DNA of 64,000 nt from Vitrella brassicaformis CCMP3155 (taxonomy: Eukaryota > Protista > Chromerida), in NCBI GenBank assembly GCA_001179505.1, contig CDMY01000376.1, positions 1 to 64,000 of the forward strand. Reading direction: 5' to 3'. Below, piece by piece: positions 40,401 through 54,232 of this stretch. Each line of letters starts with the position of its first letter. Position 1 is the stretch's first letter. The translations under genes and the position numbers were made by a program. The notes under the pieces were generated by a model. It ran no database searches. It was not told the origin of the DNA and worked only from the letters and a program-made list of their open reading frames with translations.

Positions 40401-41796
40401 ATGCAACGACTCGACCTCTTTCCTACCCCGATGATCTCCGATGACGAGGTGGAATCCCCGCTGGCGTTCCTGCAGGCGGTCCGGCAGCACGGCATCGACG
40501 TTATCAAGACGCCGCCGAGCAGCAACCGTGACTATCCGGCGTCAGTCCGCAGATCTCCCCGGTTCGGCATCGACAGCGACGATGACCACAACACCGAGTG
40601 TGAGTCGACTGGCCGCAGATCGGGAGCACCGCCGCGGCGGGCGAGTCCAGACCGGTTCGTGACTGCGAGGAGGGGCCAGGGGAGCACCGGCGAGCGGCTG
40701 TTTATCAGCGATACCACATCGGTGTCGGAGGGGCCGACGCCCTCCACCACGGCTCGCGGCGTGCAGAGCCAGCAGGCGTGGCAGAACATGCTGCTGCAGA
40801 CAGTGGGGACGGTGCAAGAGGACGAGCAGGGCAACGACGATGAGCACGACCCGGATGAGCCTATCCCCTCACTGAGCATATCGAGTATGAGTCTCGATAG
40901 CGTAGCGCTGTCTAACTGCGAGCGGCTGGCGATGGACGTCGACCACATGCTCACTCGGCGGTCGGCTGACGGTGGCCTCTCGATGATGACCCCGTTGCCG
41001 GGCCACCACAGGTCGTCACTGCATCAAGGAGGTGGGGTAGGCATTGTGACCACGAGCGACTCTGACAGCCTGGCCTACAGCGAGGAGCCGGTCACTCTAG
41101 ACGACGTGCAGCCCAGCCCACAGGTGCGGCTCAAGTGGCCCGATAGCGTCCTGGCGGAGCTGTCAGACCGGCTCAAGGACGAGATGCAGGCCGATGACGA
41201 CTTCGATCTGGACCCCCCCACCGACGCAGACCACCTCAAGTCACCCGAGCCGCTCGCTGAGCCTAGACCAGAACCTGATGTGCCTCACGCGGCTTCTCCC
41301 ATGATAGAGGAGAACCACCACGCCTCCCGAGTTACCCCACGGCAGCCCGAGTCCGACCATTCGCCAGCTCACGAGCAGTCGCCCCAGGACCACCATTCAG
41401 CGACCTCCGCGGCCGATGACGGCTCCCCCCACGACAAGACCCCCAACACGGCCTCGGACACCGTCACGCCTGTCAGCCGGCGGATGCTATGGTGGATCCG
41501 GAGCACACCAGTCAGCCCCTATCACGGCGGGAGCACTCGCGACACGACCTACAGGCAGCACGACGAGGCCACGCGGCCGCTCTTCCCGTTGATGCGGTCG
41601 GAGGCGGGCGCTAAGAAGCGTCGGCGGCGGCGGGTGATGCTGTTTGCGTGTGGGGGGGTGATGGTGCTGCTGCTCACACTTGCCTTGGTCGGGATCTATG
41701 GAATACTGCCGGGGGTGGTGCAGAGGTCCCTTGACAAATCGGTGAGTGAACGGCAGCCGCACATACACTCGCCGGCCACCGAACCACATGTTAACG

Positions 41797-41831
<35 letters not shown>

Positions 41832-44800
41832 TGTGTGTGGGTTGGTGATCGATCGGTCAGAGTTTGGTGCTTGATGCCATCTACATCTCTAACCCTTCCC
41901 TGAGCGGCAAAGGCGGCTACGGCTTCGATCTGGCCGTCTCAGGCAGTATGCAACGGCCCGAGGGACTCGCGCGGTCCGTCAGGGTCACCACCAAGCCATT
42001 CAGGCTCGAGATATACGGCGTCGTCAGCGAGAACCACTCCCGACCAATGATAACAGACAACAGCACAAATCGCTCGGGCCTGGGCGGATCTTCCTCATCT
42101 GATCTGCCGATGGGGTCCTTGGAGGCGCCGCCGATGGTGCTGGAGGGCTCGCCAGCGCCGCTGACGCTCGAGTCTCGCGTGAGGGTCGACGATTCGACGT
42201 CGTTCGATGCCTTCACCTACCTGCTGATGGCAAGGCCTGGCGAGCAGGCCGCGAGTGACGGCCTCGGGTGGCGGTTTGTGGGCTTGGAGGGGCTGGACAT
42301 CAAGGTGGAGCTGCCCTTCGGCGCGATCGACCTGCCGTTCCACATCAACAGCCTCAAATACGAGAGATACCTGCCAATCGATGGTGAGAAGAGAGTGTGG
42401 GCATCCAGTCCACCCCACCACGTACGTCACGTCATCTCATCTGTGTGGGTGGGTGTGTGCTGCACATCACATCAGCCATGGGCGGCTCGCTGGGCGCCGC
42501 ACTCGCTGCTGATGGCGTCGAGCTGTCTGACCTGGAGCTCAAGGGAGAAGACGAGATCGGCAAGGGAGTCGACCTCTCGCTCACCGTCGTCTTCCACAAC
42601 CCAAACAAACTCTCCATCGAGACACTCGGCAACGTCCACCTCGCTCTCGCATACAAAGCCCTCCCGATCGGCGAGCTCGTGGCGTCGAGCGCCTCGCTGA
42701 AAAGCGGGCGCAACACGTGGCGATTGAAGGGTCGTCTGGAGCCTGCGTCGCGGCTTGCTGACGGGACGGATGGGCGGGCACCAATGAGCGAGATGGTAAC
42801 TGCCATTCTCAAGCAGGAGAAGCCCGTCGTCGCCGCGAAGGGCAAACACTCGTCGCTGCCCATCTTCTCAAGTCAGCGACAGAAACAACACCGACACACA
42901 GACAGACAGACAGGAGGGAGGGGGTGAACGCTCCCGTTCTCATTTCACGCCCACTTTCTGTCTGCTCAGGTGCTGTGAGTGCCCTCGATCTGACTCTGCC
43001 CTTCGGTGCGTCCACCACCAGTGGCAGCACAGGTCGCGCCAGGGCGATAGGCGAGGAGCCTTTGGTGCAGTCCTTCCGCATGACCAGCTTCAACATCGAC
43101 TTCAACGAGCCGGTCGGCGCTGGCAACAACCGGACGGCAGACAACACGACTCACGTGGTGGGGCTGACCGGCCATGTGGCGGTGGTGGTGGTTAACCCGC
43201 TCGGCGTCTCATCGCCCATTCGCATCAACCACGTCGAGATGGTGGCCGATCTGCATAGCGTCCCCGACGGCGAGCTCCCCGTCAATCTCGGCCGCCTGAG
43301 GGCCACCCTACGGGAGCTGCACAACCAGGATGAGGCGACGGCCGCCCATTTGCTGCCGTCAACCCCACACCCTGAAGCCTTGCTTGAGCTCAACGGGCTG
43401 CTGGACCTAGCTGGCGATGGCGAGCCCTTCGGCGAGTTTGTGCAACACTTCATGGCCAACGACGAGGTGACCCTTCTGCTGGAGAACGGCGTGGCGAACG
43501 TCACCGCTGCGACGGCGCTCGGCGTGCTGGATCTGCCAGGCCTGTCGATCGACATCACCCCCGAGCATTCGACGCCCCTCAAGGGCCTTGGCGGGATGAA
43601 GGGCATCTCCCTCGAGGGCTTCCAGGTCACCGAGGTCGACTCGGACGGCAGCTGGGTCCTGGCGGCCAACGTCTCGATCCCCAACCCTTCTGCAGCAGAG
43701 GTGCCCATCCCGCCCGGCGCGCGATTCGAGATGACTTACCAGGGAGTTCAGTTGGGCTACTTCGACTGGCCCGTCGACGACCGGGGCGAGATGCTGCCTC
43801 TGCAGCCAGGCAACAACTCCTTCACTCTCGAGGGCAAGTTCGAGCCAGAGACAGAAGATGAGGGGGTGCTGGATCGGGTGGAAGACTTCTTCAGCGACTA
43901 TGTGAGCGGCAGATCGCCCCCAATCGATATCAAGATGACGTCTGGGCCGACCAGGGCGCAGAGGCCCCTTCCTGGGGCAAGCAGGAGCGGCGGCAAGTCC
44001 GCGCAGAGAGAGGAGTCGGTGCCGGGGTGGTTCAGTGCCGCCATCAACGCGTTCAAGTTCACGACAGCGGTGCGGCCGCCGACGGCCATGGTGGGGGTGG
44101 GGCAGCAGCAACCAGGACCCGCCAACCTGATCGAGACGGTCGACTTATCACAAGTGCAGCTGCAGCTGGAGCCGTCCGAAGGCGTTGCCGTGGCGGAGGA
44201 GCTGGCGGATCGACCGAAGGTGTGGGTGGTTGGGCCGCTGGTGGTCATCATGCGCAACCCAGTGGGCAGCCCCGAGGCCATCAAGGTCGACGCCGTCAAG
44301 TGGAACATCACACTCACGCCCCTCAACGGCGCGACTTCGCCCCTTGGATGGGCCTTCCTGCCCTGGACAAGCGCCACTGACGTGCATCACGTCGCACCCA
44401 GCCCCCTGAAGCGGGGCGAGTGGATCAAGTACGAGCAGGGCCAGTGGATGAACATGACGCTGCCCGTCGCTGCCCCCCTGGTGGGCTACTCGTCCGCGGC
44501 CCTGTCGGACTTCGTTGTCGACTTCTTCAACGAGAAGAAGACTGACTTGCGGATCGACGGATCGGCAGAGGTGGCCATCCAATCGTCTTTCGGAGAGATG
44601 ACGCTCGAGGACGTTACTGTGGAGTCGTCGCTGAGCCTGACGGGCATGCAGGGACTCGCGGGCACGCGTGTGACCAACCTCACCATCGCAGGCGCACAGG
44701 CGCTCCCCTCTGGCGACGGCTACGCGTTGGGGCTGACCCTCAAGGCCACCCTCAGGAACCCATCTTCTGCGTCGATCCGCCTTGGCCGTCTGACGCTCGA

Positions 44801-47800
44801 TCTGGTGTATGGCGACGACGGCGAGACGTTTGGCGAGGTGGAAGCGGCCGATGTGAACATCAGGCCGGGGGAGAGCGAGACCGACTTTGCTGGCGCCATC
44901 ATGATGACACCCAAGACGGCTGGGGCGCTGTCGAGGTTTCTGTCAGACCTGCTTGATGGCCGGGAGCCCCCTTTGAGGAGTCAGTTGCGGTCGTCGGATC
45001 AGTCGCTGCTGCCGTGGCTGGCCGATGCTCTGCAGGAGGTGACGCTGCAACCTTCTCTCAACACAAGTGACCTTAGGGAACAGTTCCTGCCCGCTGCAGG
45101 GTGAGCACTGAGGCAACACATACAGTCACGCACACATGTGTGCCCTTCGACATGTGACTGTGATCTCTCACTCTCAGGTCGGGTGGTCTCATCAGCGACG
45201 CCACTTTCGCTAACCTGTCCCTCTGGGCCGTCAACGGCACTCACGTGTCGCTGGCGGGCGACCTCAGCGTCGTGGCCTTTTCTCCGCTCACCGACCACCT
45301 GGCCTTCACCATCCAGCACGTCGGCATCGATGGCGCTCTCTTGTGGGCACGCAACGGCACGCAGACATCCCTGGGCCAGCTGCAGCTCGCCCCCACACGC
45401 CCCAGCCAAGTGGGAATCAACGGCACCGAATCTCTCGGCCTCGCACTGCCCTTCGACGCACTCCTGGCGCTCAACGAAGTGCATTCGGCCGATGAAGGGA
45501 CGCTTGCTTTCGGCGACTTTGTGGCCACGTTTGCCCGGGAGGGGCTGGTCGACATGGTCCTCGACGGCAAGGCGGACATCGGCGTGACGGTGAAGGCGCT
45601 CGGCAACGACAGCGAAGCCCTCGACCCACTCGCCCTGAACCTCACTGGCCTGTCCCTCAATCTCACCTCATCTCTAGGTCAGGAGCGCCCACCAGACAGC
45701 CAGGGCCTGGGAGTCGACCTGCAGAAGCTGACGTTCACTGGCGAGGCGCCGACCGGCGGGATTGCCATCGAGACAGCAGTGGAGATCAGGAACCCCGCCG
45801 ACGCAACCATCGACCTCGGCCCGGTCACACTCGGCCTTCTCATCCCGTGCGGGCCGTCGGGGGATGCGAATGTCACGCTGGGGTCCGTCGGCACAGATGC
45901 CCTCAGGCTGCGGCCTGGCAGCAACGTGCTGACGCTGCGAGGGGCCATCAGCCCTGATAAGGAGGACCTGCCTCACGTGTCGGAGGCCTTCTCGACGTCG
46001 GTGGGTGGCGGCGCGATCCCTATGCGTGTGGTGCCGGTGAGGGGCGAGGGGGCGCCGTGGATCAGCCAAGTGCTCGAGAACATGCAGCTCACGACCACGC
46101 TCCCGTCCATCAGTCAACTGCAGGCGGGAGCTACGGACGCGAATGCGACAGCCAGGGCCGGGCTGGTCCGGCAGGTGACACTCGTGAGCTTCAACCTGGA
46201 CCTCGGCTCGGTCATGGGCGTCAGACGGGTGCTGATGGGCCGGCGGCTGCAGGCCGCGACGCTACCGGTGAGTGGGCAGCTGGAGGCCAGCGTGTCCAAT
46301 GTCTTCGGCAGCGAGGTGCCCCTCAACGTGACCTCGATTGCCATCTCCACCCTTCTCGAGTTCGACGGGGAGCCCTTCGGCCGCCTTATTATTCCTAGGG
46401 TCACTATCGCACCATCCGCGCAGAGGACGTCGTCTGACGGCAAGTCGCTGAACCTCACCATCGAGCTGGACGGATCTCTCAAGCTCATTGACGACGGACG
46501 GGGGTTTGTGGCCGTCACGGACCAGCTGCTGAACCGGCCGGCGGGGGCGCCACCCAGTCCGCTGTCGGCCAATGGGTACGTGTCCGTTGCTGTCGACACA
46601 CCCATCGGCCTGCTGGACCTCAAGGGCCTCCCGCTGTCCAACGAGCTCCCACTGGGCACCAGAGAGGGGGAGGGGGGCGGCGACGCTCTCTCCGTCAACA
46701 TCACGAGCTTTGAGATCGGGGGTGGTGGTCCAGAGGCGGTGGAATACGACACCGACCGGTTTGTGACCATCGACACGGCCGTGACGCTGGGCAGCGTCCT
46801 CGGGGTGGGCCTCTCCTTTGGTCAGGCCGACATCGCCCTCAGCATGGAGTACGCTAACCAGACTGTCGGAGAGCTGCAGACGACTAATGGGGTCACCATC
46901 CGATCGGGCGGCAGCACTGAGATGGAGTTTGCCGGCGCGCTGATCCGGACGAAGAGCAATGAGGCGGCCTTGACGCAGCTGCTCGAGGCGGCTGTGTCGG
47001 CTCCCGACCCGGCTGCTGGGAGTCGGCTGAGGCTCGTCGGGAGGGAGGTGTTGCTGCCACGGGACTCTCCTGCCAAGGAAGTGCCCGAATGGCTTGTCAA
47101 CGTCACGCGAAAGGTCGCCATGGACCTGCCCGTGCCATCGTAAGCCACTCCCTCCAGCCACAGATCGGACGGATGTGAGGATCTTTGNNNNNNNNNNNNN
47201 NNNNNNNNNNNNNNNNNNNNNNNNNNNNNNNNNNNNNNNNNNNNNNNNNNNNNNNNNNNNNNNNNNNNNNNNNNNNNNNNNNNNNNNNNNNNNNNNNNNN
47301 NNNNNNNNNNNNNNNNNNNNNNNNNNNNNNNNNNNNNNNNNNNNNNNNNNNNNNNNNNNNNNNNNNNNNNNNNNNNNNNNNNNNNNNNNNNNNNNNNNNN
47401 NNNNNNNNNNNNNNNNNNNNNNNNNNNNNNNNNNNNNNNNNNNNNNNNNNNNNNNNNNNNNNNNNNNNNNNNNNNNNNNNNNNNNNNGTCACTATCGCAC
47501 CATCCGCGCAGAGGACGTCGTCTGACGGCAAGTCGCTGAACCTCACCATCGAGCTGGACGGATCTCTCAAGCTCATTGACGACGGACGGGGGTTTGTGGC
47601 CGTCACGGACCAGCTGCTGAACCGGCCGGCGGGGGCGCCACCCAGTCCGCTGTCGGCCAATGGGTACGTGTCCGTTGCTGTCGACACACCCATCGGCCTG
47701 CTGGACCTCAAGGGCCTCCCGCTGTCCAACGAGCTCCCACTGGGCACCAGAGAGGGGGAGGGGGGCGGCGACGCTCTCTCCGTCAACATCACGAGCTTTG

Positions 47801-50800
47801 AGATCGGGGGTGGTGGTCCAGAGGCGGTGGAATACGACACCGACCGGTTTGTGACCATCGACACGGCCGTGACGCTGGGCAGCGACCTCGGGGTGGGCCT
47901 CTCCTTTGGTCAGGCCGACATCGCCCTCAGCATGGAGTACGCTAACCAGACTGTCGGAGAGCTGCAGACGACTAATGGGGTCACCATCCGATCGGGCGGC
48001 AGCACTGAGATGGAGTTTGCCGGCGCGCTGATCCGGACGAAGAGCAATGAGGCGGCCTTGACGCAGCTGCTCGAGGCGGCTGTGTCGGCTCCCGACCCGG
48101 CTGCTGGGAGTCGGCTGAGGCTCGTTGGGAGGGAGGTGTTGCCGCCACGGGACTCACCTGCCAAGGAAGTGCCCGAATGGCTTGTCAACGTCACGCGGAA
48201 GGTCGCCATGGACCTGCCCGTGCCATCGTAAGCCATTCCCTCCAGTCACGGATCGCATGGATGTGAGGATCTTTGTGTGCGTGTTGTACAGGCTCGGTGA
48301 GCCCTCTGACTTACTGCAAGAGGTGGAGCTGCTGTCCCTGAGCCTCGGCCCGCTGGCGAACGAGTCGAGCAAGGCGTCCCTCGAGCTGCGGCTGGACCTC
48401 ACCCTCGGCGGCCCCCTCGACTACTCCGGCCTGGGGCTCACCTTCAACGCCATCAACGCATCCATCGCACTCGCGTCATCAGACCCCGCAGACACCGCAT
48501 CCGTCCACCCCATCGGCCTGGCCGTGGTGTCCTCCAGTGACACGCTGGCCATGCGCCTTGCGAACAACACACTGAGGGCCAACTTCACCGGAATCCTCGA
48601 CATGGATGACGACGGCAACGGTCTCGCCACATTCGCTCGGCTGCTGCTCGGCCCCAACACGACACACACCACCCCGGCCACGCTGGGACTCAACGGCACG
48701 CTGGACGTGGCGGCACTGGTCGGCCGACTGGGTGTCCCCGTTCAGCTGCGAGGCGTCTCCATCACCCAGCTGCTGCGCTTCACGCGCAAAGATTCGGCAC
48801 CCAGACCAGCGTCTATGGCCGTGCGTCCATTCGGCGCCCCCACAGCTGCTGCTGCTGCTGCTGCTGCTGCAGGGGGCCTGGCCATCAGGCTGTCAGAGGT
48901 GGACTTCACTGGGGCGGTGGCGGGGGGAGGTCTGGGGGTCAAGACGGTCGCTCTGGTCGACAACCCCTCCCTCGCACAAGTCACTCTCGGCGACGTGGCC
49001 TTCGTCCTCACCCTGCCGGCCACAACCGAGGGAGAAGCACCGGTCGTCCTGGGGTCTGTCGGCGGCAAAGGTGTGCATCTGCCATCTGGGCGGTCCAAGA
49101 TCCACCTCACCGGTCAGCTGAGGCCTGACGAGGCCGACATGGCGGCCGTCTCGAGCGCCTTCTCAAGCTACATCCAGGGGGGCGGTCTGCCCGTCGACAT
49201 CCGCGTGACGGGCGCCGGCAACACCACTCTGCCGCGGTGGCTCGAGACCCTCACCTCCACCTTTGACCTCAACGCCAGCCTGCCGCCCCTCCACACGCTC
49301 AGCGGTGTCACGACGGAGGCGGCTGGTGCGGCCGGTGCAGTGGGGGGAGAGTTCGCGCTGATCGAGCAGATGGAAGTGACAGCATTCGAGCTCGACCTGA
49401 GCAACACCACTGCTGCAGAGAACCGTATCGGCGTCACGGGCGGCCTCCGCGCGACCCTCCGCAACCCACTGGGGGCGTCGGCGCCCATCACAGTCGACAG
49501 GTTGAGCCTCGCGTCAGATCTGCACATGGTCGAGAATGACACGCAGTGGGGCGAGCCTTTCGGCCATCTGGAGGTGCCGCAGGACAACTTGGCCATCACG
49601 CCGGCCGACGGCAATGCGACGGGCCTGATCGACCTCACAATGAACCTGACGGGCGTCGTGGAGCTGCTGGATGGCGGCAAGCCGTTCACCGAGTTCGCCA
49701 GGCGGCTCCTGGATGCCGACATCGAAGCAGATGCAGACACTTCTGTTGCTGGATCGCTGTCGATGGGTCTGAGGGGCGAGATGGTCAGCGCAGTGGGCAC
49801 CCCGATGGGCATGCTGACCCTCAGCGGCCTGCCCCTTTCAGAAACAGTCGACTTCCGGTCCTTGGGCTCTCTCCGTGACAGCGTGAACCTCACCCAGTGG
49901 TCGATCGAGGGCGTCGATGAGGCCGCCAACGGGACCGCCCCGAAGCTGCATCTCGCGGCAACTGTGGAGCTCAAGAACCCCTCCTTCCTCGGCCTATCCC
50001 TCGGCGACGTCATGTGGACGCTCACCCGACTTGATGAGAGTAGACGAGGGGCGAGAATCGGGCAGCTGGTGTCGTCCAACCTCACCATTCAGCCGAAGCC
50101 GGCGGTCACGACGATCGGCCTGCTGGGGAGCCTGGAGCCGCCAGACGGCAAGTCGGCCGGGGTTTTCTTCTCGGAGGTGCTCAACGACATGCTTCTGAGC
50201 GACACCCCCAACCCCGTGACGGTGCGGCCGAGCCCCATGGGCAGAGACACCCCCTGGCTGAGTGAGGTCATGGGCAGCATGGAGCTGCAGCTGTCGCTGG
50301 GGGGGCTGTTCGAGGGCTCACTTCTGCAGTCCATCACGCTCGAGCGGCTCCATTTCGCACCCAATGCTGACGGAACCGTTGAGCTGAAAGGCAGCCTTCT
50401 GCTGGCGGCGCGCAACCCGTTCACCAAGGTGGGTGACGTGAGCATCGACACCATCTCCATGACCGCCCAGCTGGTGGACAGCAAGTCCCGCCCCGTCGGC
50501 CGCCTGACCATCCCGACACAACCCGCCCAGCGCATTGAAGCCGACGACACCAGCAACGGAACCACCAACGCGACGGACTCCCTGCGAGCGCGGTTCGTCT
50601 TCCGGTCATCCCTGACGATCGACGAGAACAGCGCGGCCATCGGCGACTTCGTGTCGGCCCTCACTGCGACCGAACCCGTCCCCAGCTCCGCCCTCAGGCT
50701 GCGGCTGGTGGGCTCATCCAACGTGTCTGTGGAGAGCCCGCTGGGTCTGATTGAGATCCGTGACCTGCCGCTGGACGACCCACTGCCCCTTACCGACGGC

Positions 50801-53800
50801 GACGAGCCCGCCTTCGACCTCGCTTCAGCCAAGCTGGGATCCATCGCCTTCGGCAGCGAATCGGGAGACGAAGGTGTGGCCTTCACCACCGACCTGTCAG
50901 TGAGTGTGCCGCCGGACTTCCCCCTCTCCGTCGATCTGGGCAACGTGCTCTTGGCGCTCAAGTACCCTGCCGGCGGGGCGAACGAAAGCATCACGCTGGG
51001 CGAGCTGGCAATGGAGCCTCTCCGCATTCGAGCGGGCAACAACTCTCTGCCTGTGAGAGGCCGGCTGTTGCCGCCTGACCCCGAGGACCCAAATGCCATG
51101 CTGCAAGCGAGCGAGTTCATCTCGACATACCTCTCCGGCCAGAACGCCACCGTGCGCGTGCAGGGCATGTCCATTACCATCCCGGGCGCAGAGACCGCCC
51201 CGTCGTGGCTCGAGAAGGCCGTCAAGGCCATCGCCGTCGACATCACGCTGCCCGGCAGGCCGCAACAGACGCTCCAGGAGCTGAGGATTGCCGATGTATC
51301 CCTTCGGGCAGCGGACAACGCGACGGCGGGCGCCACTTTCTCCGCGTCGGTCCGCGGAGGGTTCACCAACCCGCTGGGCGAGGGCTCCGAGGTTACTATC
51401 AAGCGGGCACGTGTTGACGTGGCCATGAGGCGCCCGGGAGCTGCTGGTGACGAGACCCCACTGGGCACTCTGACCACCCCCTTCATGGCTGTGAAGACCT
51501 CGGTCGATGAGAGCGCTCAGCGGAACATCTCCCTTGAGCTGCAGGACGGCATGATCGTCTTCCCCGACGGCGGCGAGGGCTTCGGGAACCTGGCTGCCGA
51601 CTTGCTGAGGTCGCGAGACGACGACAACCTCACCAGCTCGACGGACGACGGCCCCGACGAGCCAGAGGCAGAGCAGCGGCTGGTGGTGGGTGGCTGGATC
51701 GAGGCAGAAGTCGACTCCCCTCTCGGCGAGCTCACGCTCCGCCTTCCCATCGAGACGGATGTCACCATGGGAGGTCTCTCTCTCAGCAGCCAGGGGGGAG
51801 CTGGCGGTTTGAGGGAGTGGTCCGTCCGCGACGCCGCCAACGTCGACGAGGGGTTTGTCATGGAGGCAGCCTTTGACGTGGTCATCGGAGGCGACAGCGA
51901 TGGCTCCCTTGCCTCCATCGAGCTGGGCGACATCGAGCTTGAGGTTTGGTACGACAGCGGCCGCCTGGCGGAGCTGGTCGCGCCTGACGTGACGTTGAAG
52001 CGTGGCGCCAACCGGCTGGTGGTCAGCGGTGTGATCCAAGAGGGCATCACCGACCGCGACACCGCCTCCGCGTTCCTCAGCGCCATGGTGGACAGACGGC
52101 CGCTGCCCATCACCATCAAAGGCAAGAAGGCCGCCGACGGCGAGGAGAGGTCGTGGGTGCTCATGGCCATGGAGGCTTTGTCGCTGGATGTGGAGCTGTC
52201 ACCATCCTCCAGAGGAGATGTGGCCGTGGCGGAGGGGGAGGGCAATGGTGAGGGTGCTGGTGTGGGTGCTGTGGGTGTGGAGAGCGGCGAGTTCATTGTC
52301 AATGTGGCGCTGGACTCACTCATGTTCGACTTCACCACTTCTGCGGGAGGTGGTGGAGGTGGAGATGGCGGCGGACCGGTGCTGCAGGGCAAGGTGGAGG
52401 TGGTCTACCAGTTGCCTGAGGCGGTCGATGTCACACACACGGTAACCTTCACACACTCACACACACTCACACACACTCACACACACACAGAGACAGTCAT
52501 GTCCCTGCTGCCGCTGCAGGTCATCGAGTTGAACCAGACGGTCGAGCTCTGGCGCGTCAAGGACAGCTCCCTCGAGCCCCCCCTCGGCCGCGTCTCCCTC
52601 TCCACCACCAGCGTCTCGCCTTTCACCCCTTCCGCAGAAGCCTTTCCCGCCCACAATGCCTCCCGGCTGCGGGCTTTCAGGGCGTCATTCGCCGACGCGA
52701 CCCTGCAGATAGAAGAGGGCGAGGAGCGGGAGCGTTTCCAGGCTTTCCTGGCTTCACTTGTGGAGGAGAGTGGGCCATCGATGCTGGAGCTGAGCGGGAG
52801 GGCGAGTCTGGCTGTGCGGACCGCCGTGGGCGAGCTCGAGGTGCGCGAAGTCGACCTTACCCTCAGGAGAGACATCGAACGTAAGACGGCCGCCAATGGT
52901 CTCCGTGTAGAGGGTGGGTTGGTCCATGTCTCTCTGTGTGTGTGTGTGTGTGAGCAGATATCGGTGGCACCCTGGAAGACCGCAGTGGTGTGTTCGGGAC
53001 CGAGGTCACAGGCGGCACCGCCGACGCCCTCATCGTCGAGACCGACCTGTGGATCGCTCACCAAGGCTTTCTCTCCGCCCACCTCGGCGACGTCTCCCTC
53101 GACCTCTACCTGCCCACCGACCGCTCTCTCGAATCGTCCCTCCCCGACAGCATGACAATCCTCGACGAGAGCGACGGCGAGGGCGACACCATCCTGGTCA
53201 AGGTGGGGGAAGTGACGGTGCCAGATCTCGCGCTTGTCAACGGGGAGAACCGCACGACCCCCGTGCAAGTGCGGATCGACCCGGCTCCCGGCCCCGACTT
53301 GCGTGCGGGGACCCGTGTGTTCCTGTCGAGGTATGTGAGCCAGCTGCCGACGGAGTTGGAGGTGAGGGGTCGGGGGGACAGTTCGCGGAACGAGCTGCTG
53401 AAGGTGCTGTTTGGGTCGTGGAAGAGCCGGATGACCATTCCTGGGGCGAGGAACAAACTCATGCAGGGGGTGGAGCTCGACCTTAGGGTGAGTGGAGTGG
53501 ATCTCTCTCTGTGCGGACGTGACGTGTGTGTATCATCCTTTGTGTGTGGTGTGTGGTGTGTGTGGTGTGTGTAGGGCATCCCGCTGATCAACATGCGGGT
53601 GCTGGCGCGGCTGACGCTGCGCAACGCCTTCCCAGTGGACATCGCCATCCGACACATCAACTCGAGCGTCTACAACGATGGAACGTACGTATGGGTCTGC
53701 ACACACACACACAGAGAGCAGCATGGGTGGGCCATGCGGGCACTCTCCCTGTGTGTGTCTCTCTCTGTGTGTGTGTTGATGCTTTGCAGGCTGATAGGTC

Positions 53801-54232
53801 GCACGATAGTGGATTGGCGAGACGACCCGTCGGTGATCCGCGCGGAGAGCACCAGCACCACAAGATACTACAGGCTTAACACGTCCATCTCGGGGGCCGC
53901 CATACGCACCGTAAGACAAGACACGCTGCACCCACCGCAAGGAAGGCCATTCATGTGTTGGTTGGTCCATGCCGTCTGTCTGTGTGCGCGTGTGTGTGCA
54001 GCTGTTCCGGTCGCTTGTGGGGACGGCCTACGTGGAGGTGAGGGAGCAAACAACAGAGGCACACTCACCACTCACTCACTCACTCACCATGCCCACCACA
54101 CGAGTGTGTTGTGTCATTGATGGCATGGCTTGCCTCTGTGTGTGTCAGTCCGACGGCACGGTTGAGTTTTCTGTCGAAGATTACATCGCGTATGTCGACT
54201 ACGACGAGAAGGACGTCCCCACAACCTTCTAG
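40401..54232 (+). CDS. Giant type II membrane protein with about 21 tandem LEA_2/DUF3712 (Tag1-like) modules, roughly 4000 aa; a possible extra 5' exon at 40093; multi-exon
   Basis: Low-complexity N-terminus, polybasic KKRRRRR, then TM segment VMLFACGGVMVLLLTLALVGIYGIL (~41634-41705) followed by PGVVQRSLDKS. Repeated motif xLxNPSxxxIxLGxLxLxL...G.L....L.+.PG.N.+.L.G.L.P....+..F+S....G.......PWL...+..+.L...LP. Dozens of NxS/T sequons. Terminates ...YVDYDEKDVPTTF* at 54232. Confidence 0.8.
46400..48275 (+). repeat. 788-bp near-identical direct duplication flanking an assembly gap (46400-47187 and 47488-48275)
   Basis: Same sequence at offset 1088. About 10 substitutions counted by eye: 5 exonic and 5 within 48 intronic nt. 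Confidence 0.92.
47188..47487. other. Assembly gap (300 N)
   Basis: Run of N. Confidence 0.99.

What the first reader, a model, noticed from the sequence alone, without database searches (positions are those of the whole stretch)
40401..54232. Giant (~4000 aa) single-pass protein built from about 21 strictly alternating LEA_2/DUF3712 (Tag1-like) modules
Seen: after a ~410-aa disordered acidic N-terminus, a polybasic KKRRRRR and one TM helix, the rest of the protein reads as alternating module types. Type A: L+..+.+..+.+...L.G.+...+.NP+G...+.+..+.+...L...G.L.+P...F..F...++.....L.L.G...+.+.T.+G.+.L..L.+. Type B: +...+.+.NPS...+.LG.+.+.L.Y....G.+....L.+..G.N.+.+.G.+.P....+S.F+S....G....+.+.....PWL..++..+.L...LP. 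By eye there are about 10 A/B pairs plus a terminal LEA_2-like domain (RLTLRNAFPVDIAIRHINSSVY), with about 50 N-glycosylation sequons. Known: DUF3712/LEA_2 repeats characterise the fungal Tag1-type vacuolar type II membrane proteins; yeast Tag1 acts in autophagy termination and is much shorter. Inference: the beta-rich modules may stack into a very long luminal or extracellular rod or hydrophobic groove, i.e. a candidate bridge-like lipid conduit or wall-spanning spacer whose length is tuned by repeat number. I am not aware of this being described in an alveolate-type genome.
Basis: partly seen in the sequence, partly recalled or inferred. Interest (0 to 1): 0.8.

Follow-up and report, generated by a model that had tools for sequence, protein, structure and literature searches.

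The report
Giant Tag1-like LEA-2 repeat membrane protein
This is a real, expressed gene of the alga Vitrella for a roughly 3,900-residue single-pass membrane protein made of about 21 LEA-2 (Tag1/DUF3712-type) beta-sandwich modules; the kind is already known from fungi, but it turns out to be conserved, unit by unit, in malaria-related parasites such as Toxoplasma, where nobody has studied it.

Summary
Window 40401-54232 (+) is one 12-exon GT-AG gene, public model CEM07275.1 of Vitrella brassicaformis. It encodes an acidic disordered tail of about 404 aa, KKRRRRR, one TM helix, ten A/B module pairs of about 330 aa, and a conserved C-terminal cap.

Pfam DUF3712, LEA_2 and (borderline) Tag1_C match. 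Predicted models give the LEA-2 topology for every module and superpose on fungal Tag1/DUF3712 models (TM 0.63-0.69).

The N gap is flanked by a 788-bp duplicate, 98.7% identical. Transcript contigs from two studies splice 47139 directly to 48292, so the frame is continuous. The protein is about 3,915-3,926 aa, and the public 4,152-aa model carries a 237-aa artefact.

The kind is known: Levine (2021) described fungal DUF3712 chains of over 4,000 aa and proposed that LEA-2 domains bind lipid.

Two results looked new in the literature I could search:
- Orthologues of 3,700-4,300 aa exist in Toxoplasma, Hammondia, Besnoitia and Rhytidocystis, plus a shorter one in Chromera.
- Pair units group by position in the array rather than by species.

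The continuous lipid bridge is untested; the fold is not that of bridge-like lipid transfer proteins.

The scan noted a paralogue elsewhere in this genome (s1-218540).

The parts
40401..41741 (+). Exon 1: start codon, disordered acidic cytosolic tail (aa 1-404), polybasic KKRRRRR (41613-41633), TM helix (41634-41708)
   Evidence: identical to P0002 aa 1-447
41861..42383 (+). Exon 2: first A-type LEA-2 module (divergent)
   Evidence: pair HMM covers it only from the A-module helix onward
42476..42871 (+). Exon 3: first B-type module
   Evidence: 97 bits; Pfam DUF3712 17.8 bits, below cut-off
42970..45100 (+). Exon 4: A/B pairs 1 and 2 (43029-44126, 44127-45098)
   Evidence: Pfam DUF3712 86.3 bits; the intron 4 joint 45100/45178 is seen in RNA contigs of X1
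45178..47139 (+). Exon 5: A/B pairs 3 and 4 (45179-46138, 46139-47137)
   Evidence: donor at 47139 joined to 48292 in X1 and X2
46400..47187 (.). Left copy of the gap-edge duplicate (end of exon 5 plus the first 48 nt of intron 5)
47188..47487 (.). Assembly gap (300 N)
47488..48275 (.). Right copy of the gap-edge duplicate, 98.7% identical to 46400-47187. Transcripts skip it. The public model wrongly includes it as an exon (P0002 aa 2119-2355)
48292..52441 (+). Exon 6: A/B pairs 5-8 (48293-49327, 49328-50326, 50327-51268, 51269-52252) and the start of the last A module
   Evidence: (DUF3712 42 bits); structure models
52520..52913 (+). Exon 7: rest of the tenth A module. The donor is either 52913 (GTGGGT) or, as in the public model, 52880 (GTAAGA). 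Both keep the frame
52955..53487 (+). Exon 8: tenth B module
   Evidence: 105 bits
53575..54232 (+). Exons 9-12 (53575-53684, 53790-53910, 54002-54037, 54149-54232 with stop TAG): conserved C-terminal cap domain, probably a 21st LEA-2-like module, ending ...DYDEKDVPTTF

Best explanation
The gene encodes a member of the Tag1/DUF3712 branch of the LEA-2 superfamily. It is a type II single-pass membrane protein of about 3,915-3,926 aa.

Shown here:
- one 12-exon reading frame;
- expression, with splicing of introns 4 and 5;
- a non-conserved disordered tail, a polybasic stop-transfer stretch and one TM helix, followed by the family's P-x-[IV]-[VA]-[QR] motif;
- ten A/B pairs of LEA-2-type modules plus a conserved C-terminal cap;
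- predicted models with five strands, a helix and two strands per module, and confident relative placement of two and of four modules;
- an ectodomain with one cysteine in 3,473 aa and three times the expected number of N-glycosylation sequons;
- pair units that are positional orthologues of those in apicomplexan proteins.

Inferred:
- The tail is cytosolic and the array faces the lumen of an endolysosomal or vacuolar compartment, or the topologically equivalent cell surface.
- The array forms a fairly stiff, glycan-coated rod several tens of nm long.
- Like yeast Tag1, it reports a luminal state across the membrane to its long cytosolic tail. The state would most plausibly be sensed by hydrophobic ligand binding in individual LEA-2 grooves.
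- The position-specific units act as distinct binding or spacing stations, not as interchangeable length units.

My confidence in family identity and architecture is about 0.9. My confidence in this mechanism is about 0.3.
For: - Frame and splice sites. The same exons appear in CEM07275.1.
- Transcript joints: 45100/45178 in X1, and 47139/48292 in X1 and X2.
- Pfam: DUF3712 143 bits, LEA_2 45.7 bits and Tag1_C 27.1 bits on the public protein, plus exon-wise DUF3712 hits.
- Repeat structure.
- Models: pLDDT 75.7 with pTM 0.72 for a pair, and pLDDT 83.7 with pTM 0.71 for four modules. Both show LEA-2 strand and helix order.
- ESM Atlas: the pair model superposes over 280-298 of 333 residues on fungal DUF3712/Tag1_C/LEA-2 clusters at TM 0.63-0.69, and on bacterial tandem LEA_2 at 0.43/0.50.
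- Solved structures: the longest alignments are to the TMEM106B luminal domain 8B7D and Arabidopsis LEA14 1XO8 (Z 5.0; 139 and 132 residues).
- Topology: polybasic stretch before the TM and a conserved motif after it in all homologues. Sequons are 55 against 17.5 +/- 3.8, with none in the tail.
- Positional orthology of units.
- The Toxoplasma orthologue TGME49_281440 is detected in tachyzoite membrane-type gradient fractions (PMC7670262 Table S2).
- Family biology: Levine, bioRxiv 10.1101/2021.03.12.435176.
Against: - No localisation, glycosylation or ligand data exist for this protein or its orthologues.
- Matches to solved LEA-2 structures are weak (Z 5.0, amid generic Ig-like folds with Z up to 6.2). 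A profile search of PDB sequences found nothing.
- Exon-wise LEA_2 scores are below the cut-off, and Tag1_C is at its cut-off.
- The sequon excess is strong in this gene and its recent paralogue, mild in the other Vitrella paralogues and absent in the apicomplexan orthologues. It may therefore reflect a Vitrella-specific role.
- The spliced contigs differ from the reference at clustered sites. They could come from the 91-97% identical paralogue, whose matching part lies in its own gap.
- A single full-length transcript was not shown.
- Yeast Tag1 has three domains, and nothing shows that a 21-domain chain works the same way.
Confidence: 0.7

Rival explanations
1. Bridge-like lipid conduit. The stacked modules would form one continuous hydrophobic groove along which lipids slide between two membranes, or between membrane and wall.
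For: [quoted passage not shown]
- Modules follow each other without long linkers, and two- and four-module tiles are predicted with pTM 0.71-0.72, so a fixed stack is plausible.
- The strand 1 and strand 7 motifs are the best conserved parts of the A module.
Against: - In 3BUT the groove is closed at one end, and it is absent from the plant NMR structures.
- The modules are predicted as beta-sandwiches capped by a helix, not open repeating beta-groove units. Nearest structural neighbours are Tag1/DUF3712/LEA_2 clusters.
- No VPS13, ATG2 or other BLTP Pfam family matches.
- The array is not cytosolic.
- Only one end carries a membrane anchor.
- Groove continuity could not be measured here.
Confidence: 0.1
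2. Extracellular spacer or coat protein. The glycosylated rod would project from the plasma membrane into or through the thick Vitrella wall, or form a glycocalyx, with length set by the number of pairs.
For: - Sequons are enriched threefold in this gene and its recent copy.
- There are four paralogues of differing length in Vitrella: 2,524, 3,136, 3,801 and about 3,920 aa.
- The recent copy has lost three pairs in register.
- The type II anchor leaves the C-terminus outside.
Against: - Orthologues of the same length are kept in wall-less Toxoplasma tachyzoites, where the protein is detected.
- The characterised relatives Tag1, Vac7 and TMEM106B are all vacuolar or lysosomal.
- Units are position-specific and ancient, not interchangeable spacers.
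- The near absence of cysteine is unusual for an exposed wall protein (own judgement).
Confidence: 0.2
3. The giant size is largely an assembly or annotation artefact: collapsed or duplicated repeats, or several genes fused.
For: - The locus holds a gap with duplicated edges.
- The public model is inflated by 237 aa.
- A 91-97% identical paralogue confuses read placement.
Against: - Outside the 788-bp duplicate, units are only about 20% identical, so they cannot be mis-assembled copies.
- The frame stays open across all twelve exons.
- Independent transcriptome-derived orthologues, such as Rhytidocystis at 4,270 aa, have the same architecture and unit order.
Confidence: 0.03

Closest known systems
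Saccharomyces cerevisiae Tag1 (YLR173W), Pfam DUF3712 / Tag1_C
   Same: Type II membrane protein with a cytosolic N-terminal tail and one TM helix followed directly by tandem LEA-2-type domains. The same Pfam families match. The two-domain model superposes on Tag1-type clusters at TM 0.69.
   Different: Tag1 has three LEA-2 domains in about 600 aa; this protein has about 21 in about 3,900 aa. The vacuolar location and autophagy-termination role of Tag1 are untested here.
Giant fungal DUF3712 proteins (e.g. Ustilago maydis UM15053 with 15 gapless LEA-2 domains; members over 4,000 aa; Boletus edulis 2,384 aa)
   Same: Long gapless chains of LEA-2 domains behind one TM helix. DUF3712 lies out of register with the true domain borders. 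The Boletus protein was the only hit in the exon 6 search.
   Different: The fungal proteins examined match mainly the B half of the Vitrella pair profile, at irregular spacing. The alveolate proteins keep a regular A/B pair unit and a shared C-terminal cap.
Apicomplexan and chromerid orthologues: Toxoplasma gondii TGME49_281440 (3,689 aa), Hammondia HHA_281440, Besnoitia BESB_030960, Cyclospora, Rhytidocystis pertsovi (4,270 aa), Chromera Cvel_765
   Same: Same tail, TM helix, A/B pairs and cap. First, third, penultimate and last units are orthologous by position.
   Different: They show no sequon excess. The coccidian units are more broken up by insertions. All are annotated only as hypothetical or transmembrane proteins.
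TMEM106B, Vac7, archaeal tandem LEA-2 (PDB 3BUT) and plant LEA14 (1XO8)
   Same: [quoted passage not shown] Where membrane-bound, the anchor is type II with luminal domains. 8B7D and 1XO8 are among the structural matches.
   Different: These have one or two domains only. Sequence similarity to them is undetectable by profile search against PDB sequences.
Bridge-like lipid transfer proteins (VPS13, ATG2, BLTP1-3)
   Same: A very long beta-rich repeat protein anchored at one end, possibly handling lipid.
   Different: BLTPs have a different fold (an open repeating beta-groove), lie in the cytosol at contact sites, and share no sequence or model similarity with this protein.

Membership tests
Tag1 / DUF3712 multi-LEA-2 type II membrane proteins | Pfam DUF3712 (PF12505) above the gathering score | tested here: met
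   Exon 4: 86.3 bits; exon 6: 42 bits; exon 5: 24.2 bits (cut-off 24.1). Public protein: 143.4 bits in 4 stretches.
Tag1 / DUF3712 multi-LEA-2 type II membrane proteins | Pfam LEA_2 (PF03168) match | tested here: met
   45.7 bits against a cut-off of 25.4 on the whole public protein. Exon by exon the scores are only 20.3 and 18.1 bits, below the cut-off.
Tag1 / DUF3712 multi-LEA-2 type II membrane proteins | Tag1_C (PF22786) match | tested here: inconclusive
   27.1 bits against a cut-off of 27, and on an internal module rather than the C-terminus. Orthologues score 43.7-61 bits.
Tag1 / DUF3712 multi-LEA-2 type II membrane proteins | Type II topology: cytosolic N-tail and one TM helix directly followed by the first LEA-2 domain | tested here: met
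   KKRRRRR at aa 405-411 and TM helix at aa 412-436. There is a single hydrophobic window. P-x-[IV]-[VA]-[QR] follows the TM helix in homologues from fungi to alveolates. This is prediction only.
Tag1 / DUF3712 multi-LEA-2 type II membrane proteins | [quoted passage not shown] | tested here: met
   The order of secondary structure in all six modelled modules fits. TM is 0.63-0.69 to DUF3712/Tag1_C/LEA-2 clusters. Support from solved structures is only weak (Z 5.0).
Tag1 / DUF3712 multi-LEA-2 type II membrane proteins | Vacuolar or lysosomal location and a role in ending autophagy | not testable with these tools
   The only lead is the detection of TGME49_281440 in tachyzoite gradient fractions. 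The classification table is cut in the held copy.
LEA-2 lipid transfer domain (Levine's proposal) | [quoted passage not shown] | not testable with these tools
Bridge-like lipid transfer proteins (RBG superfamily) | Repeating beta-groove units and Chorein_N / VPS13 / ATG2-type sequence families | tested here: not met
   No such Pfam family matches at E up to 0.1. The models and their nearest neighbours have the LEA-2 fold.
Bridge-like lipid transfer proteins (RBG superfamily) | Cytosolic rod spanning two membranes at a contact site | tested here: not met
   The polybasic stretch lies on the N-side of the TM helix, and the sequon-rich array lies on the C-side. That places the array in the lumen or outside the cell, by prediction only.

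The most novel reading that the evidence does not exclude
The chain of about 20 LEA-2 domains is an ancient organelle-lumen device. It was already differentiated unit by unit in the common ancestor of chromerids and apicomplexans and is still present in Toxoplasma as TGME49_281440. Each position-specific unit would bind or hand on a hydrophobic ligand, so the protein would act as a luminal lipid relay or a molecular ruler of fixed length, coupled to cytosolic signalling. That would be a new class of luminal, non-RBG long-range lipid-handling protein.
Probability: 0.12. Interest if true: 0.75.

Novelty: new member of a known kind. Interest (0 to 1): 0.4.

Why it matters
LEA-2 proteins (TMEM106B, Vac7, Tag1) are linked to lysosome function and neurodegeneration, yet their molecular activity is unknown.

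A giant, positionally differentiated LEA-2 chain kept from a free-living alga to Toxoplasma gives that question a genetically tractable test case. It also shows that the long forms are not a fungal oddity.

On the practical side, the public Vitrella model is 237 aa too long because of a gap-edge duplicate. A near-identical paralogue also complicates read mapping at this locus.

Tried and rejected
- Foldseek against PDB with the two-domain model gave only generic two-sandwich proteins at TM about 0.2. VIA-align gave no match above Z 6.2.
- Profile searches of PDB sequences with the pair profile and the cap profile found nothing meaningful.
- The terminal domain has no Pfam hit, alone or in eight of nine orthologue C-termini; the ninth scored a weak LEA_2 14.4 bits. 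A single sequence against the A or B profile gave nothing. Only the profile of orthologue C-termini aligned, and weakly.
- The word-index search with exon 6 found one fungal protein because of its length window.
- Paper searches for TGME49_281440 found nothing in main texts. The 2024 CRISPR screen supplements lack it. The hyperLOPIT classification table is cut in the held copy.
- The laid contigs could not show whether the spliced contigs come from this gene or its paralogue. No DNA contig bridges the gap, so I cannot tell whether the duplicate is an overlap artefact or a real tandem copy.
- I considered RNA editing for the clustered differences in RNA contigs and rejected it. A DNA-like run (X4) carries both versions, and the paralogue explains them.


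Full report
**What is there**

ORF listing and translation show long open stretches on the + strand from 40401 to about 54230, with G+C of about 0.61-0.66.

Reading the junctions gives twelve GT-AG exons with no stop:
- 40401-41741
- 41861-42383
- 42476-42871
- 42970-45100
- 45178-47139
- 48292-52441
- 52520-52913
- 52955-53487
- 53575-53684
- 53790-53910
- 54002-54037
- 54149-54232

That is 3,926 aa. With the public model's better donor at 52880 it is 3,915 aa.

I joined exons only inside scripts, to check the frame. My own joined protein was handed to no search tool. All searches were made exon by exon by reference, or with the public protein id P0002. The search or fold of a joined model of my own was left out.

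**The gap**

The 300 N at 47188-47487 are flanked by two copies of the same 788 bp: 46400-47187 and 47488-48275. They differ at 10 positions, five in coding sequence and five in the intron.

The left copy ends 48 nt into intron 5. The right copy runs on into the rest of that intron and exon 6.

I laid Logan contigs of four runs on 44500-50400:
- Runs X1 and X2, from different studies, hold contigs that join 47139 to 48292 with GT..AG.
- X1 also joins 45100 to 45178 (intron 4).
- No run shows the joint into the right copy that the public model CEM07275.1 uses.

That public model (P0002, 4,152 aa) repeats aa 1881-2117 as aa 2119-2355.

Two caveats apply:
- No DNA contig bridges the gap. I cannot say whether the duplicate is an unmerged contig overlap, which I think likely, or a real tandem copy that is spliced out.
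- The spliced contigs differ from the reference at clustered sites. They may come from the close paralogue described below.

**Identity**

The genome has 72.7 Mb in 1,064 contigs. The protein is CEM07275.1 / A0A0G4F5N5 of Vitrella brassicaformis CCMP3155, annotated as uncharacterised.

Pfam gives DUF3712 on exons 4, 5 and 6 (86.3, 24.2 and 42 bits) and weak LEA_2. On the public protein it gives DUF3712 143 bits, LEA_2 45.7 bits and Tag1_C 27.1 bits.

**Repeat anatomy**

- An internal HMM finds modules that alternate in score, about 100-120 bits for B and about 61-65 bits for A. Single-module seeds find mostly their own type.
- Eight pairs that lie within exons align over about 330 aa at 18-26% identity.
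- The pair profile finds ten pairs on the protein.
- A and B profiles align in register, NP motif on NP motif (hhalign E 1.4e-4). Both are therefore versions of one domain.
- The last 133 aa are conserved in orthologues, at 44% identity to a Vitrella paralogue and 36% to Rhytidocystis, with a shared C-terminal D-x-D/E-x-x-[VL]-P/x-x-F ending. They align weakly but in register with A and B. A 21st LEA-2-like module is likely but not proven.

**Fold**

AlphaFold models were made of one pair (pLDDT 75.7, pTM 0.72, eight rows) and of two pairs (pLDDT 83.7, pTM 0.71, 35 rows). In both, every module has five strands, a helix, then two strands; B adds a short helix. This is the LEA-2 topology as Levine describes it.

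The pair model superposes over 280-298 residues on fungal DUF3712/Tag1_C/LEA-2 clusters of the ESM Atlas (TM 0.63-0.69) and less well on bacterial tandem LEA_2.

Solved structures give only modest scores. The TMEM106B luminal domain and Arabidopsis LEA14 have the longest alignments (Z 5.0).

A pTM above 0.7 for a four-domain tile suggests a defined stack rather than loose beads. I could not inspect coordinates.

**Topology and composition**

The tail (aa 1-404) is acidic, rich in S/T/P and not conserved. A polybasic run precedes the single TM helix, and a P-x-[IV]-[VA]-[QR] motif follows it in homologues from fungi to alveolates.

The 3,473 ectodomain residues hold one cysteine, 2% lysine and 55 N-x-S/T sequons, against 17.5 +/- 3.8 in shuffles. 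The tail has none. The excess is shared by the recent paralogue, is mild in the other Vitrella paralogues, and is absent in apicomplexan orthologues.

**Relatives**

A profile of the pair searched against 1.84 billion representatives finds 887 proteins. Named ones fall into these groups:
- Three further Vitrella paralogues.
- Rhytidocystis pertsovi (4,270 aa, ten full pairs).
- Toxoplasma gondii (3,689 aa), Hammondia HHA_281440 (3,680 aa), Besnoitia (4,043 aa), Cyclospora and Chromera Cvel_765.
- Corallochytrium, the CRuMs protists Diphylleia and Rigifila, and many fungi.

A tree of 43 pair units groups them by position in the array, not by protein:
- The first units of Vitrella, Chromera and Rhytidocystis group together.
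- The third units of Vitrella and Rhytidocystis group together (98/96).
- The last units of Vitrella, Rhytidocystis and Chromera group together (99/98).
- The penultimate units likewise.

The array was therefore already differentiated before chromerids and apicomplexans split.

**Paralogue**

C376:275401-284083 (-), which is CEM07615.1, is 91-97% identical in DNA. It lacks 43005-46117, that is three pairs removed in register, and it has its own 300-N gap where this gene has 46375-48786. Its junction sequence is the loose end seen at 46118 in three runs, including RNA.

**Literature**

The only paper in the library that mentions DUF3712 is Levine's. It shows the following:
- DUF3712 is an out-of-register view of tandem LEA-2 domains.
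- Such proteins are almost all fungal and reach over 4,000 aa.
- A Ustilago protein has 15 gapless LEA-2 domains.
- Tag1 has three LEA-2 domains.

I found no main-text mention of the Toxoplasma orthologue. It is present in the hyperLOPIT intensity table, rising towards fractions 8-9 and low in fraction 10, so tachyzoites make it. Its class was not readable.

**Verdict**

The kind, including giant forms and the lipid idea, is published for fungi.

Two results looked new in the literature I could search: the conserved apicomplexan and chromerid orthologue set, and the positional orthology of units. The correction to the public model is a by-product. The bridge-conduit reading remains an untested minority view.

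Noticed in passing
window 47488-48228; public protein CEM07275.1 aa 2119-2355: The public gene model includes the gap-edge duplicate as an extra exon, through a cryptic AG near 47513. This adds a 237-aa repeat that no transcript contig supports.
   Followed up: yes
G000:C376:275401-284083 (-), loci L008, L011, L014: A recent paralogue (CEM07615.1, 2,524 aa as annotated) is 91-97% identical in DNA. It has an in-register loss of three A/B pairs (window 43005-46117) and its own 300-N gap at 280789-281088. It is transcribed: its junction appears as loose ends at 46118 in X1.
   Followed up: yes
G000:C613:284949-293303 (-), G000:C356:94699-105010 (+), weak hits on C298: Two more giant paralogues exist: CEM26372.1 (3,136 aa) and a 3,801-aa protein. 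Vitrella therefore has a family of at least four such genes.
   Followed up: partly
window 46388-46611, 46939-46960, 48323-48423: Clusters of differences appear in contigs of X1, X2 and X4, while X5 has the reference letters at nearly all these sites (it shares the variant at 48390-48423). X4 holds both versions at 46450-46641. These are most likely cross-laid paralogue sequence, not editing.
   Followed up: partly
window 49314: Nine bases (three codons) in the alanine/glycine-rich linker between pairs 5 and 6 are left out in contigs of X2, X4 and X5.
   Followed up: no
introns, e.g. window 41806-41840, 52925-52952, 53540-53572, 54140-54146: Nearly every intron carries a (TG)n/(TC)n microsatellite just upstream of its acceptor site.
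   Followed up: no
runs X9, X12-X20: Marine sediment and microbial mat metagenomes of 2023-2025 hold up to 0.53 of this gene's sampled words. A Vitrella-like organism seems to be present there.
   Followed up: no
Toxoplasma TGME49_281440 (P0181), PMC7670262 Table S2: The Toxoplasma orthologue is detected by hyperLOPIT in tachyzoites. By eye, its gradient profile resembles those of an ABC transporter and a V-ATPase subunit listed in the same excerpt. Its assigned class could not be read.
   Followed up: partly
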